From contig NC_068997.1 of assembly GCF_001194135.2 (NCBI RefSeq), positions 21,158,302 to 21,222,153 on the forward strand: DNA of 63,852 bases, given 5' to 3'. Shown here piece after piece: positions 16,681-63,852 of the stretch. The translations under genes were made by a program, and so were the position numbers. The notes below the pieces were generated by a model. The model was not told where the DNA came from, did no database searches, and saw only the letters and a list, made by a program, of their open reading frames with translations. This stretch comes from Octopus bimaculoides. Its lineage: Eukaryota. Positions within the stretch are counted from its first letter, which is position 1. Each line of letters opens with the position of its first letter.

Positions 16681-16820
16681 CTTTCGTTTTTATGATAGTC
16701 TACTGCAATTATAATACTCTGATAACCAAAATTTCGTGCTCCGAGTTGAGTACCAGGAGTCGGTCCTGCTTTATTCAATACACAAAACGAAAATTAGTAC
16801 CCATAGATCTAATCGATTAT

Positions 16821-17003
16821 GGGAGCTGGCTGAATCGTTAACACGCCGGACAAAATGCTTAGCAGCATTTCGTCCGACTTTACATTCTTAGCACAAATTG
16901 CACCAAAGTCTACTTTGCATTTCATCTTTTCGAGTACCATTTGGACAGTCTAGCACCCTTCCCCAAAATTTCAGGCCTTGTGCCTATACCAGAAAGAATT
17001 ATA
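16821..17003 (+). mobile_element. SINE-B copy with internal deletion (AGAAAG-type tail)
   Basis: GAGCTGGCTGAATCGTTAACACGCCGGACAAAATGCTTAGC head; end AAATTTCAGGCCTTGTGCCTATACCAGAAAGAATT. Confidence 0.85.
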
Positions 17004-34618: not shown

Positions 34619-34830
34619 TCTTTTCTACTCTAGGCACAAGGCCCGAAATTTTGGGGGAGGGGGCCAGTCGATTAGATCGACCTCAGTATGCAACTGGTAC
34701 TTAATTTGTCAACCCCCGAGAGGATGAAAGGCAAAGTTGACCTTGGCGGAATTTGAACTCAGAACGTAAAGACAGACGAAATACCACTAAGCATTTCGCC
34801 CGCCGCGCTAACGTTTCTGCCGCCTCGCCA
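34619..34830 (-). mobile_element. Relatively young SINE-B copy
   Basis: TTTTCTACTCTAGGCACAAGGCCCGAAATTTT..GGATGAAAGGCAAAGTTGACCTTGGCGGAATTTGAACTCAGAACG..CTAACGTTTCTGCC. Confidence 0.92.
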
Positions 34831-40795: not shown

Positions 40796-41215
40796 GGCGT
40801 AGGAGTGGCTGTGTGGTAAGTAGCTTGCTTACCAACCACATGGTTCCGGGTTCAGTCCCACTGCGTGGCACCTTGGGCAAGTGTCTTCTACTATAGCCTC
40901 GGGCCGACCAAAGCCTTGTGAGTGGATTTGGTAGACGGAAACTGAAAGAAGCCCGTCGTATATATGTATATATATATGTGTGTGTATGTGCGTGTTTGTG
41001 TGTCTGTGTTTCTCCCCCCAACATCGCTTGACAACCGATGGTGGTGTGTTTACGTCCCCGTAACTTAGCGGTTCGGCAAAAGATACCGATAGAATAAGTA
41101 CTAGGCTTCTTCCAAAGAATAAGTCCTGGGGTCGATTTGCTCGACTAAAGGCGGTGCTCCAGCATGGCCGCAGTCAAATGACTGAAACAAGTAAAAGAGT
41201 AAAAGAGTAAAAGAG
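40796..41215 (+). mobile_element. Young full-length SINE-A (tRNA head, CORE-like segment, internal microsatellite, (GAGTAAAA)n tail)
   Basis: A-box TGGCTGTGTGG, B-box GGTTCAGTCCC, CACCTTGGGCAAGTG (CORE-like, recalled from MIR/CORE-SINEs), tail shared with 17768-17897. Confidence 0.95.
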
Positions 41216-42595: not shown

Positions 42596-42859
42596 GTATA
42601 ATAATAATAAATGCGCCCTTTCAAAGCCTAGCCAGGCTCATGGGCCCGGTTTCCCGGTTTCTGTGGCGTATGTGTTCCCCAGCTGGACGGGACGCTAGTC
42701 CATCGCAGCGCTACTCATTTTTGCCAGTTGAGTGGACTGGAGCAACGTGAAATGAAGTGTTTTGCTCAAGAACACAATGCGTCGCCCGGTCTAGGAATCG
42801 AAACCACAATCTTACGATCATGATGCCGACACCCTAACCACTAAGCCACGCGCCTCCAC
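42596..42859 (-). mobile_element. Young full-length SINE-D with 10-bp target-site duplication
   Basis: A-box TGGCTTAGTGG, B-box GGTTTCGATTCC, CORE-like TGTTCTTGAGCAAAACACTTCATTTCACGTTGCTCCAG, (TTA)n tail; TSD ACATGTAGTA at 42586-42595 and 42860-42869. Confidence 0.95.
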
Positions 42860-43569
42860 ACATGTAGTATATATATAAGTGCAATCATATATAATTGTAA
42901 TTCAATCGATTTACAGTGTAATACTGATACTTTATTAGCCGCCTTTTACAAATCCCAAGCCGTAGACAAAGGTAAGGAAACGATATGAAGTTATTAGTTT
43001 CACGCCGTAAGGAAGAAATATAAGAATGAGCTCGATGTTTTGTACTGTAGTATGTTCTTCCTTGTAGCGTAGCACTAATAACTACATACTGTGTATTCTT
43101 CTTGGGTATTCTTTAAACGCATTTTTCTTCCAAGTCAACTGGGTTGTTCAGAAAGCATCTACACAGTGTTTCGCTTTTCTAGAAATGGCGAACAATTTCT
43201 TTTCAAACCACGCTTAATCATCTTAAAAATTGGCAGCCATATTGAACAATACAGACCTGAGTTATATTGCATGAAAATAAGAGGGAATATTCGTAGCTGA
43301 AACGCTTTGATCATAGGACTATATTTAATATGATTTGACCTGGTGATAAGCAATAACAAAAACAATGGCAAAAGACAACAGCAAAAATTACAATAGCCAA
43401 ACAAAAAACAAAAAAAAAGCAAACAAAAAAAAAACGTATACCTTATCCCGAGGAATCAGTGATCCAAGATTGAATTTAAAGTAGAGTACACGACTAATGT
43501 CTGCAATCTTGAAACTTGTTTCAGTATTGGATTATTTCTCCATCTCTGTGTTGGCTTCCATAATAAAAT

Positions 43570-44825: not shown

Positions 44826-47244
44826 TCTACCAAGAACTACAATATACAATATAATCGTTCTTTAAAAAAAAAAAAAAAAAGCATGAGAGGATATGATGTG
44901 AAACAGATTTGGTTGCTGTTTCCTGCTGGTTTTAGCTATCACGTAAAGTCTGTCTTATATAGAGGAAGTCTCTGTAACGGGAATAAATCGTTGAATTTAG
45001 CTTGGCAGACCGGCGCCTCATGGACTCCGTTATCATATTATGTATCCATTTGTTTCTGTGTATCAAAGTGTAAATGTAGCTATCTATGTTTATATATGTG
45101 TGTATGTGTGTGAATGTGTGTGTGTATCTATATGTATGCGTAAAGTTAAGTGTAACATTATATGTGTGTGTGCGTGTGTACTTGTGTGTGTAAGTGTGTT
45201 TGTGTTTCTGTGCCAAATTAATCAAAGAATGTTTACATGCGTTGATTAATGAACCTTATTCCAGAATATGTCACCTTGTTATTTAAAAACAAACACACAC
45301 ATATGCACACACACACATATGCACACACACACATGCACACATACTCACATACACACTACATTCTCACACACTGACACACTCATACACACACACACGCATA
45401 TACACCAAAGGAAATTAATTCTTAACCGTTACTTATTTGTCGATCATTTTCCTGTCTTTGAAAACTCTTTGAAATCGAATTAAGTAAAAAGAAAACGAAA
45501 ATAATAATACAAAAAAATACGAATAAATAAACAAACAAACAAATAACATAACGCGAAATGAATAAAAAAAAAAAAAAATATATTTTTCAGAATCATTATA
45601 AAGATCCAAATTGTTAGATGGTGTTTCCTTGAAACTAATTAATTGTATTTTTATTTAATTTATTTATATATATTTTTTTTATTTTTAACAAGAAAAATAA
45701 CTCCACCTGTCACAAACTATAAACATATANNNNNNNNNNNNNNNNNNNNNNNNNNNNNNNNNNNNNNNNNNNNNNNNNNNNNNNNNNNNNNNNNNNNNNN
45801 NNNNNNNNNNNNNNNNNNNNNNNNNNNNNNNNNNNNNNNNNNNNNNNNNNNNNNNNNNNNNNNNNNNNNNNNNNNNNNNNNNNNNNNNNNNNNNNNNNNN
45901 NNNNNNNNNNNNNNNNNNNNNNNNNNNNNNNNNNNNNNNNNNNNNNNNNNNNNNNNNNNNNNNNNNNNNNNNNNNNNNNNNNNNNNNNNNNNNNNNNNNN
46001 NNNNNNNNNNNNNNNNNNNNNNNNNNNNNNNNNNNNNNNNNNNNNNNNNNNNNNNNNNNNNNNNNNNNNNNNNNNNNNNNNNNNNNNNNNNNNNNNNNNN
46101 NNNNNNNNNNNNNNNNNNNNNNNNNNNNNNNNNNNNNNNNNNNNNNNNNNNNNNNNNNNNNNNNNNNNNNNNNNNNNNNNNNNNNNNNNNNNNNNNNNNN
46201 NNNNNNNNNNNNNNNNNNNNNNNNNNNNNNNNNNNNNNNNNNNNNNNNNNNNNNNNNNNNNNNNNNNNNNNNNNNNNNNNNNNNNNNNNNNNNNNNNNNN
46301 NNNNNNNNNNNNNNNNNNNNNNNNNNNNNNNNNNNNNNNNNNNNNNNNNNNNNNNNNNNNNNNNNNNNNNNNNNNNNNNNNNNNNNNNNNNNNNNNNNNN
46401 NNNNNNNNNNNNNNNNNNNNNNNNNNNNNNNNNNNNNNNNNNNNNNNNNNNNNNNNNNNNNNNNNNNNNNNNNNNNNNNNNNNNNNNNNNNNNNNNNNNN
46501 NNNNNNNNNNNNNNNNNNNNNNNNNNNNNNNNNNNNNNNNNNNNNNNNNNNNNNNNNNNNNNNNNNNNNNNNNNNNNNNNNNNNNNNNNNNNNNNNNNNN
46601 NNNNNNNNNNNNNNNNNNNNNNNNNNNNNNAAACGCATTCTTAAATAATGTAGTTGAACATTTACATATGAAGTTGCTCGCGTATACGTATACTACTGTA
46701 TTCCATACATGGACAAATAAATACGATCAAACGTATAGGCATGCCTGAGAGTTTAAGACGTTTGCAAGTTAGCCGCGTAGATCCAGGTTCGCTCTTACCT
46801 TGCGTAACTTTGGGCAATTGTATTATTATTTTTTTTTTTATACATCTAACATCGAGTTGATCAATATCTATGTTGCCAGTATAAGTCTCACCAACGGTGA
46901 TTTTATCTTCCATTTTTCCAGAGATAAATAAAGTCCAAATAGATAACAAGTGGGTTCCTTTCACTCAAATCCTTACCTAATTTTCTGATTTAAAAAACAA
47001 AAAAAAAGCACTACGCAATGACCTTTAGTATTGCGATGATGACAACACTGGAAACATTCCGGTATCAATAAACCTCCTCTCAGAGAAGCATATCCTAACC
47101 ATTACCACTGTTCTTAGTCAGCTAGGGAAGGATTCACTAAGGTAAGGTTACTAGATTTAATATAGTGTCATTTCTACTTGTAACTGTGATACCCCGTGTT
47201 CCTTACATTCAAAAACACACTTATGATTCCAAACTGACATTCCC

Positions 47245-47420
47245 TATTCAGCTGCTGTTTCTGCAGCTGCTGTTTCTGCAGCTGCTGTTTCTGCTGCTGC
47301 TGTTTCTGCTGCTGCTGTTTCTGCTGCTGCTGCTGCTGCAGCTGGTGCTGTTGTTGTTATTGTTGTTAATGTTTAGCCCATGTCTTCCCTCATCGAATAG
47401 ACTTATGGTCTAAGGTGCTC
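47245..47420 (-). repeat. 15-bp minisatellite (CAGCTGCTGTTTCTG-like) grown from the (AAC)n tail of a family C fragment
   Basis: Five to six units, then GTTGTTGTT..GTTTAGCCC, the family C 3' end. Confidence 0.8.
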
Positions 47421-48156: not shown

Positions 48157-48399
48157 NNNNNNNNNNNNNNNNNNNNNNNNNNNNNNNNNNNNNNNNNNNN
48201 NNNNNNNNNNNNNNNNNNNNNNNNNNNNNNNNNNNNNNNNNNNNNNNNNNNNATATATATATATATATATATATAGTCTTAGTATACGCACTTGAAAGTA
48301 CATCAACTTTATATATATATTATGGACAGTATCTATACAAACGTGGAACGGCACTAGCTGTAATATTTCGGCACAGAAGGTGTTAAAAATCTATAAAGC

Positions 48400-48479
48400 T
48401 CGTTCAGAATATCGTCGGTTGATCGTCAGACCTGATCGTAACACTGAGTCTGACAAACCACCGACGACATTTTGAGCGA
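48400..48479. ncRNA. Candidate pre-miRNA-like hairpin (alternatively a palindromic MITE)
   Basis: 32-nt arms (48400-48431 and 48448-48479) with 26 Watson-Crick pairs plus 2 G-U, 16-nt loop, in unique sequence. Confidence 0.4.
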
Positions 48480-48635
48480 ATCTTGTGTTATTCTTTGTTT
48501 TGTATTTTTAATACTCAAGTCTCTTTGCAAACTTTTTCTGAGACAAAATATCACGGATAACGCTTTTCCACTGTCATAAGTGTTCTATACGTTGTTATAA
48601 TTTTTTTGGGGGTTTTTTTTTCTGTTAAGCAAGAA

Positions 48636-49290
48636 TACCTTCACAAATATCGATTTATGAAGTAGTAGTACCTTCTCATCTGTTTATTTATTAAGTAGCA
48701 ATATCTTCAGCACTGTCTTATTCATAACTGTTTCTTTTTATTTTATAACTGTTTCTTTATAAAGCAGTAATGATTTCACAACTACATGTTTATAAAGTAG
48801 TAATAATTTCCACAATTGTTTGTTAATATCCTTATAATTGTTTCTTTGTAAGGTTGTAATACCGCCATAACCGTTTCTTTATAAAGTAGGAATACGTGCA
48901 CAACTTCTTGAAAGGGATAATACTTTCAAAACTGTTAATTTCTAAAGTAGTTTATACATTCACAACTATTTCTCTTTAAATTAGTAACATTTTAACTCTA
49001 ATAATAGAGTTACACTTTTTTCTGCAAAATAGGGGTAGCTTATCCTGTTCAGGCTATATTATTAGCATTATCCTGCGTTTGAGAATTTAAAATCACTTTT
49101 TTAACATTCTAAGACATCTCAGTGCTTCTAAAGCAAACTTCATTTGTTTGTTTACGTTCATTGTAATTTGGATTTTAACTCTGTTTTATAAAATAGCAAT
49201 ACTTTTAATACAGCTGTTTCGTAATAAACTAGTAATATCTTAATCGTCCTTTCCTCATAAAGCACTGATAAATAGCATTTACCCTTCTAA
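48636..49290. repeat. Degenerate ~33-bp AT-rich minisatellite
   Basis: Units such as ATAACTGTTTCTTTATAAAGCAGTAATGATTTC and ATAACCGTTTCTTTATAAAGTAGGAATACGTGC. Confidence 0.75.
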
Positions 49291-49843
49291 ATTAATGTAT
49301 TAATGCCTTCACGTCTGTGACCTTGTATTATGATAGACAATACGTCCACAAACACCTTTTTTTTTTTCATAATCTTGAAACTCTTAAGCTTTCACTACAG
49401 TACGACTGAATAAATAATACGATTTCTAATATAAACACATGTAGAAATGTCTTCCAAATAGAATGTTAGCTGTTTAGTCAATGAGAAATAACTATTTTCT
49501 AGATTTAGAAAAACCTCGAAAGATTCAGCGAAAAGCAAATATACAAGTCTGTTAAATAAGTAAAGAGGAATAAATATACGACTCATTGTTTGCATGTATG
49601 TCATATTTCCTGGTGTCATCTATGGTGGAAGAAGTATACTTCTAAAGTTACTCGCCATATTCGTGAATTTATAAAGCACACTTGCAGTGTAAAGCGTTAA
49701 ACATCGTTTCTCCTTACGAACCCTATATACAGCTGAATCGAATGAAAATAACTCATACTTATAAATCACTGAGGTCACGTGCTAAAGAGCTAATAACACT
49801 GTAATATGCGTCCATGGGAAATCTATAATGATTAAAAACTGTT

Positions 49844-49941
<98 letters not shown>

Positions 49942-50970
49942 AAGCCCTGTAAAACAGCCACCCATGTTCCACACAATAAAAAGGAATATTTTCCTACGTC
50001 TACGAAAGTGTTGTATAAAGAAGATCGAGATTACACAGAGTTCAACACGCGTTCGAATTTTTCTCCTAGGATTTGAACTCAGAACTGAACGAGACAAACC
50101 ATTGATGAATTTATACACCACACATACAGTTTAAAGCGTTAAACTTCATTTTCCCCTCATCAACTGTATTTACGGTCAGATCGATTGTACTAGGTGATAG
50201 TTAAGATCGATTGTACTAGGTGATAGTTAAGCATTTGGAAAAAGCATTAAAACGACAATAGTCACTTGATACGAACCGCCGACCCTTCGACCACACTAAG
50301 CTAAAACCCGCATAAATAAGTCAGCTGCCACACCCCGACTTTTGCTAATGTACACATCATCAATCGATTATCCCACAATCTTATATGTCCATCAAACTAG
50401 TATTATTCACCACACGAATTGTTTCGCGTATGTAATCATGTTAAAATTTCCGCCAAATGTAAACGTTTTGATAAACAGCAATCAAATAGGTGTTCTTTTG
50501 AAATAACAACTTCCTTACAAGCTAAAGAAATATATAAAACACGATACTTCTTGTATTTTTCTATGTTTGTTGGTTTTGGTAATTAAATTTGGCGACTTTG
50601 TAGTTCAGAAGTAGAATAAATAATGTTGATTTTTTTTTCTTTAACTAAATGGAAACACCTTGTATATTTAGGGAAATAAAATTGGATGTAACGAAGTGCA
50701 TGCCTTTCTCGTGAGCATTATTAAAACATTTAATTGAGAAAAAATTGTTTACAACTACTGATTACAAGATAAAAGTCGTGACCCAGCCTTGTAGGTTATT
50801 TCCCAATATTTACATCTTTTGTGAATTACATTTATTTCTTACATGAAATTGAGGCCAAAATATACCAACTATAGATTATTGAATTTACCCTGGTGCTTAT
50901 TTTATTGATCATGGAGGAATAAAACATTAAAATAATCTCACTTTCAGAGTGAAAGATTACAATAAATATT

Positions 50971-51174
50971 GGTTTCAAATTTGGAAACAAGGCCCGCAAT
51001 TTCAAGGGAGGGGCAAGTCGATTACATCGACCCCTGTGATCAACAAGTACTTATTTTATCGACCCAAAAGGACGAAAGGCAAAGTCGACCTCCACGGAAT
51101 TTGAACTCAGAACATAAGAATTATTGCTAAGCATTTTGCCCAGCATGCTAACGATTCTGCCAACTCGTCGCCTT
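50971..51174 (-). mobile_element. SINE-B copy (GAAACC-type tail)
   Basis: GGTTTCAAATTTGGAAACAAGGCC tail end; CGATTCTGCCAACTCGTCGCCTT head end. Confidence 0.92.
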
Positions 51175-51264
51175 GAAGGTGTAGTAAAATATTGCAAGTC
51201 ATTAACGTGGCTACTCTATCGTTTTGGTCACAGTAGCACTCTCCGGGGGTAAAAATGATATAAT

Positions 51265-51560
51265 AAGGCAGCGAGCTGGTAGAAGTGTTAGCACGCCAGA
51301 CGAAATGTTTTGCCGCAAGCTGTCCGTCGTTATGCTCTGAGTTCAAATTCTAACATCGGTATAATACCGCAAATTTTTGAAGAAAGTATAACCCAGGATT
51401 TAACTGGTACTTATTTCCATCGACCATGAAAGAATGAAAGGTAAAGCCGGCTCAATCAAAAAATGAACTCGAAACAAAAACGGTCGAAATTAGACACCGT
51501 ACGGAATTTTATTAGCAATTCTGCTACACTAATAATTCTGCCATGCAGTTCCTTTGATTT
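51265..51560. mobile_element. 5' half of a plus-strand SINE-B (51265-51352) and a degenerate minus-strand SINE-B (about 51385-51535)
   Basis: AAGGCAGCGAGCTGGTAGAAG..GAGTTCAAATTC; ACTGGTACTTATTTCCATCGACCATGAAAGAATGAAAGG. Confidence 0.75.
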
Positions 51561-63207: not shown

Positions 63208-63852
63208 GCCAAGACCCCCCGTGCTCCACTGGTAATTATTTCATCGACACCGAAGAGTAAAAGGCAAAGTCGGCCTCGGCGGAATGTGAAATGCCAATAA
63301 TAGTAATAATAATAATAATAATAGTAATAATCCTTTCTACCGGAAGCACAAGGCCTCAAATTTGAGGAAGGGGTTAAGTCGATTACTTATTTAACTGACC
63401 CCGAAAGGATGAAAGGCTAAGTCGACCTCGGCGGAATTTGAACTAAGAACGTAAAGACAGACGAAATACCGCAGAGCATTTCGCTCGGCGTGCAAACGAT
63501 TCTGCCAGCTCGGCGCCTTCGTATATAATAATAATAATAATAATAATAACGGTTTCAAATTTTGCCACAAGGCCAGCAATTTTAGGGAAGGGCATAAGTC
63601 GATTTTATCGACCCCAGTGCGTAAGTGGAACTTATTTAATCGACCCGAAAGGATGAAAGGCAAAGCCGACCCCGGCGGAATTTGAACTCAGAACGTAGCG
63701 GCGGCTGAAATACCTCTAAGCATTTCGCCCGGAGCGCTAACGATTCTGCCAGCTCGCTGCCTTGATAATAATATAATAATAATAATTTCAAATTTTGCCA
63801 CAAGGACAGCTTGGGGAAGATGATTAAGACGATTACAACGACCCCAGTGTGT
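63208..63852 (-). mobile_element. Head-to-tail array of four SINE-B copies (partial 63208-63290, 63331-63519, 63551-63763, 63786 to window end)
   Basis: Each has CCGAAAGGATGAAAGGC-type body and/or a B tail end; copies are separated only by (AAT)n spacers. Confidence 0.92.

What the first reader, a model, noticed from the sequence alone, without database searches (positions are those of the whole stretch)
48400..48479. 80-nt hairpin with pre-miRNA geometry in unique sequence
Seen: 5' arm TCGTTCAGAATATCGTCGGTTGATCGTCAGAC, 16-nt loop, 3' arm GTCTGACAAACCACCGACGACATTTTGAGCGA; 26 Watson-Crick pairs, 2 G-U and 4 isolated mismatches, with weak pairing continuing below the base. It folds equally well from either strand; the minus-strand loop contains UGU. 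Established: Microprocessor substrates have ~35-bp imperfect stems, and coleoid cephalopods have a large lineage-specific miRNA expansion. Inference: a candidate novel miRNA, or a small palindromic MITE. I do not recognise the arms as a known miRNA.
Basis: partly seen in the sequence, partly recalled or inferred. Interest (0 to 1): 0.7.

Follow-up and report, generated by a model that had tools for sequence, protein, structure and literature searches.

The report
Lone 80-nt palindrome in octopus DNA
The 80-base hairpin is real and far better than chance, but nothing testable here shows it is a microRNA or a transposon; it is most likely an ordinary, slowly decaying local inverted duplication in non-coding octopus DNA.

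Summary
Arms 48400-48431 and 48448-48479 are 32 nt with a 16-nt spacer. Each strand forms 26 Watson-Crick pairs, 2 G-U pairs and 4 mismatches. RNA MFE is -36.2 (+) and -38.5 (-) kcal/mol, z about -6.3. It is the only non-microsatellite inverted repeat of this quality in the window, and 20 shuffled windows gave none.

The interpretation could not be confirmed. Structural miRNA criteria are met on both strands: a stem of about 35 bp, a 16-nt loop and 17-19 of 22 duplex positions paired. No basal UG or CNNC sits at the canonical offsets. The two strands are exactly symmetric. Rfam gives no family match, and the arms are absent from the octopus miRNA paper's held supplements. Small-RNA reads, orthologues and genome-wide copy number were out of reach.

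The MITE reading has no target-site duplication and no second copy in 55 kb of window plus 24 kb of Octopus vulgaris.

The context is non-coding, rich in SINEs and microsatellites, and is octopod DNA. A second, weaker pre-miRNA-like hairpin lies 5 kb upstream, so such hairpins are probably common here.

Best reading: an in-situ inverted duplication, evolving neutrally, at most raw material for a miRNA. Low interest.

The parts
48400..48431 (.). Left arm of the palindrome (TCGTTCAGAATATCGTCGGTTGATCGTCAGAC). It is the 5' arm of the + strand hairpin and the 3' arm of the - strand hairpin.
   Evidence: the repeat finder I1; pair counts; folds.
48432..48447 (.). 16-nt spacer / apical loop (CTGATCGTAACACTGA). 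On the - strand it reads UCAGUGUUACGAUCAG, with GUG/UGU at loop positions 4-5.
48448..48479 (.). Right arm (GTCTGACAAACCACCGACGACATTTTGAGCGA). It differs from the reverse complement of the left arm at 6 of 32 positions: 4 transitions, one of them at a CpG, and 2 transversions.
48396..48399 (.). Left part of a weak basal extension of the stem (AAGC). It pairs with 48480-48484 and brings the stem to about 35-37 rungs.
   Evidence: 150-nt fold of the - strand. RNAfold does not choose it on the + strand.
48480..48484 (.). Right part of the weak basal extension (ATCTT). Base 48481 is bulged.
48419..48444 (+). 13-nt near-tandem duplication TTGATCGTCAGAC / CTGATCGTAACAC (10 of 13 identical). It supplies most of the loop; without the second unit the centre of the palindrome would be only about 3 nt.
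   Evidence: 47 of 2000 plain shuffles and 46 of 2000 palindrome-preserving shuffles reach the observed score (p about 0.023), which is marginal.

Best explanation
A solitary, partly decayed DNA palindrome created in place. One 32-nt stretch was copied in inverted orientation next to itself. The likely route is replication template switching or fold-back priming during repair, in a slippage-prone region rich in microsatellites. A 13-nt slippage duplication may later have widened the centre into the present 16-nt spacer. The two arms have since drifted apart to 81% identity. Shown: the palindrome itself, its statistical significance, its single-copy status in the DNA available, the lack of a target-site duplication, the non-coding setting, and the equal folding of both strands. 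Inferred: the mutational mechanism and neutrality. If the locus is transcribed, the RNA would form a hairpin of about 35 bp. That hairpin could be seen by Drosha/DGCR8, Dicer or ADAR, so it is raw material for a miRNA rather than a demonstrated gene.
For: The arms are adjacent with a short spacer and no flanking direct repeat. There is no other copy in 54.9 kb of ungapped window or in a 24.3-kb Octopus vulgaris locus. The two strands are exactly symmetric, each with 26 WC, 2 GU and 4 mismatches and with similar MFE. That is what a DNA-level palindrome under no strand-specific RNA selection would show, although four transitions carry little statistical weight. The arm differences look like ordinary decay: 4 transitions, one CpG to TpG, and 2 transversions. 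A central 13-nt near-tandem repeat points to slippage at the locus. The hairpin lies between (TA)n, (GA)n and (TG)n tracts, about 150 nt from an assembly gap. No exon or transposon protein domain is detectable in 223 stop-free segments of the window. A second complex hairpin of similar geometry lies at 42984-43088, so such structures are not rare in this DNA. Published precedent: template switching generated more than 6,000 miRNA-suitable hairpins in primates, of which at least 18 became miRNA genes (PMC10710096).
Against: The mechanism cannot be shown without an outgroup sequence that lacks one arm. The sample searched for further copies is about 79 kb of a genome of roughly 2.7 Gb (size from my own knowledge), so a MITE family of up to a few thousand copies would probably be missed. 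The significance of the tandem duplication is marginal (p about 0.02). Neutrality is assumed, not measured. The hairpin meets all structural miRNA criteria, and expression was not examined.
Confidence: 0.5

Rival explanations
1. Relic of a very small palindromic MITE: two terminal inverted repeats of a cut-and-paste DNA transposon with almost nothing between them, inserted here and since decayed. This is the architecture of human Made1.
For: [quoted passage not shown] The source genome is repeat-rich, and many SINE copies are present in the window.
Against: No target-site duplication appears at either plausible boundary. The flanks are ...TATAAAGC | ATCTTGTG..., or ...ATCTAT | GTGTTA... if the 3-bp extension is included. 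There is no second copy or fragment in the window or in L016. No transposase domain is found in the window. The termini could not be compared with Repbase or Dfam.
Confidence: 0.25
2. A lineage-specific canonical miRNA gene. A Pol II transcript of one strand folds into this hairpin. Drosha cuts about 11-13 bp above the basal junction and Dicer removes the loop. The predicted products are UAUCGUCGGUUGAUCGUCAGAC / GUCUGACAAACCACCGACGACA on the + strand, or UGUCGUCGGUGGUUUGUCAGAC / GUCUGACGAUCAACCGACGAUA on the - strand.
For: The stem has 32 bp plus 3-4 basal pairs, and the loop is 16 nt. In the predicted 22-nt duplex, 17 (+) or 19 (-) positions are paired. Three alternating mismatches sit in the middle of the duplex, and the predicted 5p arms start with U. 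MFEI is 0.95 and 1.01. The sequence is single-copy and not low-complexity. The source is an octopod, a lineage with 90 novel miRNA families (PMC9699675).
Against: There is no expression or conservation evidence of any kind. Neither strand has a basal UG or a CNNC at canonical offsets, and the UGU is 3-4 nt inside the loop rather than at the junction. No strand is favoured. Rfam gives no family: nothing at gathering score, and the best sub-threshold hit is plant MIR6217 at 29 bits against a cut-off of 110, a generic long-hairpin match. Arm 13-15-mers and six candidate seed-site 7-mers are absent from the held supplements of the octopus miRNA study; this is a weak negative because the files are truncated and hold no precursor sequences. 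Base rate: 162 miRNA genes in O. bimaculoides, against 1-2 comparable complex hairpins in about 79 kb sampled here. In primates, roughly 18 of more than 6,000 suitable template-switch hairpins became miRNAs.
Confidence: 0.07
3. A hairpin with another role or fate when transcribed (an ADAR editing substrate in an intron or UTR, or an endo-siRNA source), or a DNA-level role such as a cruciform or protein-binding palindrome.
For: A near-continuous duplex of more than 30 bp is long enough for ADAR (my own knowledge). The octopus study reports that most A-to-I editing falls in introns and 3'UTRs, where hairpins are enriched. As DNA the hairpin is also predicted to be stable (-17.7 kcal/mol, z -3.8).
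Against: No transcript, gene model or exon can be placed at the locus. There is no conservation information. This reading describes a consequence of the structure, not evidence of function.
Confidence: 0.08
4. An assembly artefact: a chimeric fold-back read or a misjoin beside a scaffold gap.
For: The window is a fragmented draft with 21 N-gaps, and the nearest gap (48157-48252) is about 150 nt upstream.
Against: Fold-back chimeras give essentially perfect palindromes. Here the arms differ at 6 of 32 positions and are separated by a 16-nt spacer. The hairpin is also embedded in about 1.5 kb of contiguous unique sequence.
Confidence: 0.03

Closest known systems
Template-switch-generated hairpins and the de novo miRNAs that arise from a few of them (Monttinen, Frilander & Loytynoja 2023, PMC10710096)
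   Same: Both are short in-place inverted copies that create a complete stem-loop of pri-miRNA size. Both have adjacent arms, no target-site duplication and a single copy. Most such hairpins are non-functional.
   Different: Here the event itself is not demonstrated, because no outgroup or ancestral sequence is available. The arms are already 19% diverged, whereas fresh template-switch events give perfect pairing.
Made1 MITEs / the hsa-mir-548 family (Piriyapongsa & Jordan 2007, PMC1784062)
   Same: Both are 80-nt near-palindromes made of two long inverted repeats and a very short centre, and both fold into stable pre-miRNA-like hairpins on either strand.
   Different: Made1 belongs to a dispersed family with mariner-type ends and TA duplications (the TA duplication is from my own knowledge). 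This element has no detectable second copy in the DNA available and no TSD. Its spacer is 16 nt, against 6 nt in Made1.
Canonical animal pri-miRNAs, including the 90 novel octopus miRNA families (Zolotarov et al. 2022, PMC9699675)
   Same: It shares the stem length of about 35 bp, an apical loop of at least 10 nt, an imperfect duplex with central mismatches and comparable thermodynamic stability.
   Different: There is no evidence of processing, expression or conservation. The sequence motifs are not at canonical positions. No strand is favoured. There is no match to any described family that could be searched.

Membership tests
Canonical animal miRNA gene (MirGeneDB-type criteria) | Imperfect hairpin with a stem of about 35 bp, an apical loop of about 10 nt or more, and single-stranded flanks | tested here: met
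   32-nt arms plus 3-4 basal pairs and a 16-nt loop. MFE is -36.2 / -38.5 kcal/mol with z about -6.3, and the centroid equals the MFE.
Canonical animal miRNA gene (MirGeneDB-type criteria) | At least 16 paired positions within the mature/star duplex of about 22 nt | tested here: met
   17 of 22 positions are paired on the + strand and 19 of 22 on the - strand, for the duplex next to the loop (structures; pairs).
Canonical animal miRNA gene (MirGeneDB-type criteria) | Small-RNA reads of 20-26 nt from both arms, with homogeneous 5' ends and 2-nt 3' overhangs (Drosha and Dicer signatures) | not testable with these tools
   No small-RNA read data are available. Arm sequences are absent from the held supplements of PMC9699675 and its preprint and from searchable full texts.
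Canonical animal miRNA gene (MirGeneDB-type criteria) | Presence of the hairpin in a second species (the rule Zolotarov et al. used for a novel octopus family) | not testable with these tools
   The orthologous locus could not be reached. The DNA collections hold no cephalopod copy and gave only chance 20-mers. Local ORF translations are not in the protein collection. The one octopus locus fetched (L016) is unrelated.
Canonical animal miRNA gene (MirGeneDB-type criteria) | Primary-sequence processing motifs: basal UG at about -14, apical UGU/GUG at the junction, CNNC at +16 to +18. These are supportive, not obligatory. | tested here: not met
   No UG or CNNC was found at the expected offsets for four cut-site registers on either strand. 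GUG/UGU occurs only in the - strand loop, at loop positions 4-5.
Canonical animal miRNA gene (MirGeneDB-type criteria) | Match to a described miRNA family | tested here: not met
   Rfam 15 gave 0 hits at gathering score in the whole window. In E-value mode there were only generic plant long-hairpin models far below threshold, such as MIR6217 at 29 bits against 110. MirGeneDB itself could not be searched.
MITE (non-autonomous cut-and-paste DNA transposon) | Terminal inverted repeats | tested here: met
   Met trivially: the whole element is two 32-nt inverted repeats.
MITE (non-autonomous cut-and-paste DNA transposon) | Target-site duplication flanking the element | tested here: not met
   The flanks are AAAGC | ATCTT at 48400/48479 and TCTAT | GTGTT at 48396/48484. 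There is no direct repeat, and no TA or TTAA abuts the ends.
MITE (non-autonomous cut-and-paste DNA transposon) | Many dispersed copies in the genome | tested here: inconclusive
   No copy was found in 54.9 kb of ungapped window or in 24.3 kb of O. vulgaris. That is under 0.003% of a genome of about 2.7 Gb (size from my own knowledge), so only very abundant families are excluded.
MITE (non-autonomous cut-and-paste DNA transposon) | Termini shared with an autonomous transposon family | not testable with these tools
   No Repbase or Dfam library is available, and no transposase domain is present in the window.
Template-switch / in-situ inverted duplication | Inverted copy lies immediately beside its template, with a short spacer, no TSD and a single copy | tested here: met
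Template-switch / in-situ inverted duplication | The ancestral or outgroup sequence lacks the inverted copy, and the change is explained by one switch event | not testable with these tools
   No orthologous sequence could be obtained.

The most novel reading that the evidence does not exclude
The hairpin is a young, octopus- or species-restricted miRNA gene born from an in-place inverted duplication. It would be absent from the current 162-gene O. bimaculoides annotation, which required presence in two species and which its authors call an underestimate. It would then be a caught-in-the-act example of how the coleoid miRNA expansion, whose source the authors call unknown, gets its raw material.
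Probability: 0.06. Interest if true: 0.4.

Novelty: new member of a known kind. Interest (0 to 1): 0.15.

Why it matters
As it stands, it matters little. Short palindromes with pre-miRNA geometry are expected by the tens of thousands in a large, repeat-rich genome, and very few are genes. If small-RNA reads and an outgroup showed it to be a processed hairpin that arose by one in-place inversion, it would be a concrete cephalopod example of de novo miRNA birth by template switching. That bears on the open question of where the 90 novel octopus miRNA families came from. Practically, the result warns that hairpin geometry alone has very low predictive value in this genome. A second such hairpin lies only 5 kb away.

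Tried and rejected
- Rfam: the whole window at gathering thresholds gave nothing. Around the hairpin at E up to 10, only generic plant long-hairpin models appeared, far below cut-off. tRNA scan: none.
- Other copies, DNA collections: a degenerate 20-mer matching both arms was scanned against metagenome, prokaryote-genome and viral collections. It gave 15 single hits confined to the 20-mer, about the number expected by chance. These collections hold no cephalopod DNA, so this says nothing about copy number in the source genome.
- Orthologues through spurious ORFs: nine local ORFs were looked up exactly and none is in the collection. A 59-aa stop-free frame across the hairpin had no candidate. 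A 98-aa SINE-derived frame had no hit.
- Ten larger window ORFs were looked up by DNA reference, with no hit. Caveat: those translations may carry V or L at the start and a trailing stop, so this negative is weak.
- Octopus DNA sample: a typed octopus rhodopsin retrieved O. vulgaris rhodopsin and its 24-kb locus. This confirmed the octopod origin of the window through shared repeats, but it is an unrelated locus with no hairpin copy.
- Literature: arm 13-15-mers and six candidate seed-site 7-mers are absent from the held supplements of PMC9699675 and its preprint. Those files are truncated and contain no precursor sequences. Full-text search for arm 13-mers found only an unrelated Arabidopsis primer. 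SINE 21-23-mers gave no paper.
- Gene context: ORF listing and Pfam on 223 stop-free, non-low-complexity segments gave only chance-level hits (best E 5e-4 among 223 queries). No exon or TE protein could be used as an anchor.
- The apparent similarity of the right arm to 50084-50108 (family D9) was rejected. Local alignments elsewhere in the window do not exceed those of shuffled hairpins.
- Assembly artefact: rejected because the arms differ at 6 of 32 positions.
- CpG content as an age clue: dropped. The hairpin has 8 CpG against 4.5 expected, but the flanks are not CpG-depleted either (8 against 8.1).

Full report
OBSERVATION. The repeat finder reports arms 48400-48431 and 48448-48479, 32 nt each, 81% complementary, with 16 nt between them (sequence). 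Counting pairs gives 26 Watson-Crick, 2 G-U and 4 mismatches on the + strand, and the same numbers on the - strand. The 80-mer folds into a single hairpin on both strands: -36.2 kcal/mol (z -6.39) on + and -38.5 kcal/mol (z -6.23) on -. None of 200 dinucleotide shuffles folds as well, and the centroid equals the MFE. In 150-nt context the - strand adds a U.G pair and three more pairs with a 1-nt bulge (48396-48399 with 48480-48484), giving a stem of about 35-37 rungs. On the + strand further pairing needs a 17-nt asymmetric bulge and A/U-rich partners, so it is weak. The - strand loop contains GUG/UGU.

IS IT MORE THAN CHANCE? Yes. I scanned the whole window for inverted repeats of at least 26/32 with a 3-60 nt spacer. 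After microsatellites are removed this is the only one, and 20 block-shuffled windows gave none. I also folded every 80-nt window on both strands at 5-nt steps. Everything that folds better is (TA)n/(TG)n, and the only comparably stable complex window is a tRNA-like SINE head at 42776-42855. A palindrome like this therefore needs a mutational mechanism. It is not a random coincidence.

CONTEXT. The window is a fragmented draft scaffold with 21 N-gaps, 54.9 kb of ungapped sequence and 36.5% GC, full of (TA)n, (GA)n and (TG)n tracts. The nearest gap is about 150 nt upstream of the hairpin. I recognised tRNA-derived SINEs from memory and then tested the source taxon. A typed octopus rhodopsin retrieved the O. 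vulgaris protein and a 24.3-kb stretch of O. vulgaris chromosome OX597836.1 (L016). The window shares several interspersed repeats with that unrelated locus at 80-91% identity over 110-410 nt. No gene could be placed. Long ORFs are microsatellite or gap artefacts. Pfam on 223 stop-free, non-low-complexity segments gave only chance-level matches. There are no tRNAs and no Rfam family at gathering score anywhere in the window. The hairpin sits in intergenic or deep intronic non-coding DNA, with no known miRNA nearby.

TESTING THE miRNA READING. The structural criteria are met on both strands:
- stem of about 35 bp and a 16-nt loop;
- 17 (+) or 19 (-) of 22 positions paired in the duplex next to the loop;
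- three alternating mismatches in the middle of that duplex;
- U at the predicted 5p 5' ends;
- MFEI of 0.95 and 1.01.

Everything beyond geometry is either negative or untestable.
- For four cut-site registers on each strand there is no basal UG near -14 and no CNNC at +15 to +22. The only UGU/GUG is 3-4 nt inside the - strand loop.
- The four transition differences between the arms split 2:2, so each strand gets 2 G-U pairs and 2 A-C mismatches and no strand is favoured. This is weak evidence, but it is what a DNA palindrome without RNA-level selection would show.
- Rfam in permissive mode returns only plant long-hairpin models far below threshold (MIR6217 at 29 bits against 110).
- The arms and six plausible seed-site 7-mers are absent from the held supplements of the octopus miRNA study and its preprint and from searchable full texts. 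Those files are truncated and do not list precursors, so these are weak negatives.
- Small-RNA reads and orthologous loci, which actually define a miRNA, could not be reached.

BASE RATE. Zolotarov et al. annotate 162 miRNA genes in 138 families in O. bimaculoides, and they accepted novel families only if present in both octopus species (PMC9699675). Relaxing my filter by one pair reveals a second complex hairpin at 42984-43015 / 43057-43088. It has a stem of about 36 rungs and z of -4.4 and -5.3. L016 has none. One or two such hairpins in about 79 kb extrapolates to 10^4-10^5 in a genome of about 2.7 Gb (size from my own knowledge). This is very rough, and the window was selected for containing the finding. 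In primates, template switching produced more than 6,000 miRNA-suitable hairpins, of which at least 18 are miRNA genes (PMC10710096). Either way the prior that a hairpin of this quality is a genuine miRNA is of the order of 1%. I allow about 6-7%, because the hairpin is clean and single-copy and the lineage is known to gain miRNAs.

TESTING THE MITE READING. [quoted passage not shown] However, there is no target-site duplication at either plausible boundary. There is no second copy or fragment in the window: a 20-mer search at up to 3 mismatches, word-7 BLAST, and Smith-Waterman hits that do not exceed a shuffled null. There is no copy in L016 and no transposase domain in the window. The copy-number test has little power because under 0.003% of the genome was sampled. 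The MITE reading therefore stays alive at about 25%.

BEST EXPLANATION. An in-place inverted duplication best fits what is seen: adjacent arms, a short spacer, no TSD, a single copy, both strands equivalent, and a slippage-prone neighbourhood. Template switching at a replication fork or fold-back repair are the likely routes. A 13-nt near-tandem repeat, TTGATCGTCAGAC / CTGATCGTAACAC (48419-48444, 10 of 13 identical, p about 0.023), supplies most of the loop. Without it the palindrome centre would be about 3 nt, which hints that slippage enlarged the loop later. The six arm differences (4 transitions, one CpG to TpG, and 2 transversions) look like ordinary decay of a once better palindrome. Shown: the anatomy and the statistics. 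Inferred: the mechanism and neutrality. If the locus is transcribed, the RNA would be a plausible substrate for Drosha/Dicer or ADAR. It is potential miRNA raw material, not a demonstrated gene. An assembly artefact is unlikely, because fold-back chimeras are near-perfect palindromes and these arms differ at 6 of 32 positions.

VERDICT. This is an ordinary kind of feature and a new instance of a known kind. Interest is low (0.15). The decisive steps are small-RNA read mapping, whole-genome and cross-species BLAST, and a MirGeneDB/Dfam look-up.

Noticed in passing
window 42975-43097: A second complex hairpin with pre-miRNA-like geometry. Arms 42984-43015 and 43057-43088 match at 25 of 32 positions with a 41-nt spacer. 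RNA MFE is -36.0 (+) and -33.7 (-) kcal/mol, with z of -4.4 and -5.3. It lies just upstream of a tRNA-like SINE.
   Followed up: partly
window 42600-42860 (-), 63380-63852 (-), 40809-41204, 34620-34828, 16796-16949, 50931-51349 and others: Many copies of at least two tRNA-derived SINE families. They match repeats in an unrelated Octopus vulgaris locus (L016) at 80-91% identity, which identifies the window as octopod DNA.
   Followed up: partly
window 48640-49270: Degenerate repeats of about 33 nt (consensus roughly TTCACAACTGTTTCTTTATAAAGTAGTAATA), irregularly spaced, starting about 160 nt downstream of the hairpin. The repeat finder detects them at 60-77% identity, but Tandem Repeats Finder does not.
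   Followed up: no
window 47236-47373: A 15-nt minisatellite, (GCTGCTGTTTCTGCA)n, of about 7 units that grades into (GCT)n/(GTT)n. On the minus strand it would read as a Gln/Ser-rich frame. No evidence that it is coding.
   Followed up: no
window 50178-50229: A perfect 26-nt tandem duplication, AGATCGATTGTACTAGGTGATAGTTA x2 (family D13).
   Followed up: no
window 49659-49709 and 50101-50151: A 51-nt direct repeat at 82% identity, 442 nt apart, flanking the long (TG)n tract at about 49850-49930 (family D8).
   Followed up: no
whole window: 21 assembly gaps totalling 8,940 N. Those I inspected are bordered by (TA)n, (TG)n or (GA)n microsatellites, so the gaps probably mark unresolved simple repeats. 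Long 'ORFs' in the window are artefacts of these tracts and gaps.
   Followed up: partly
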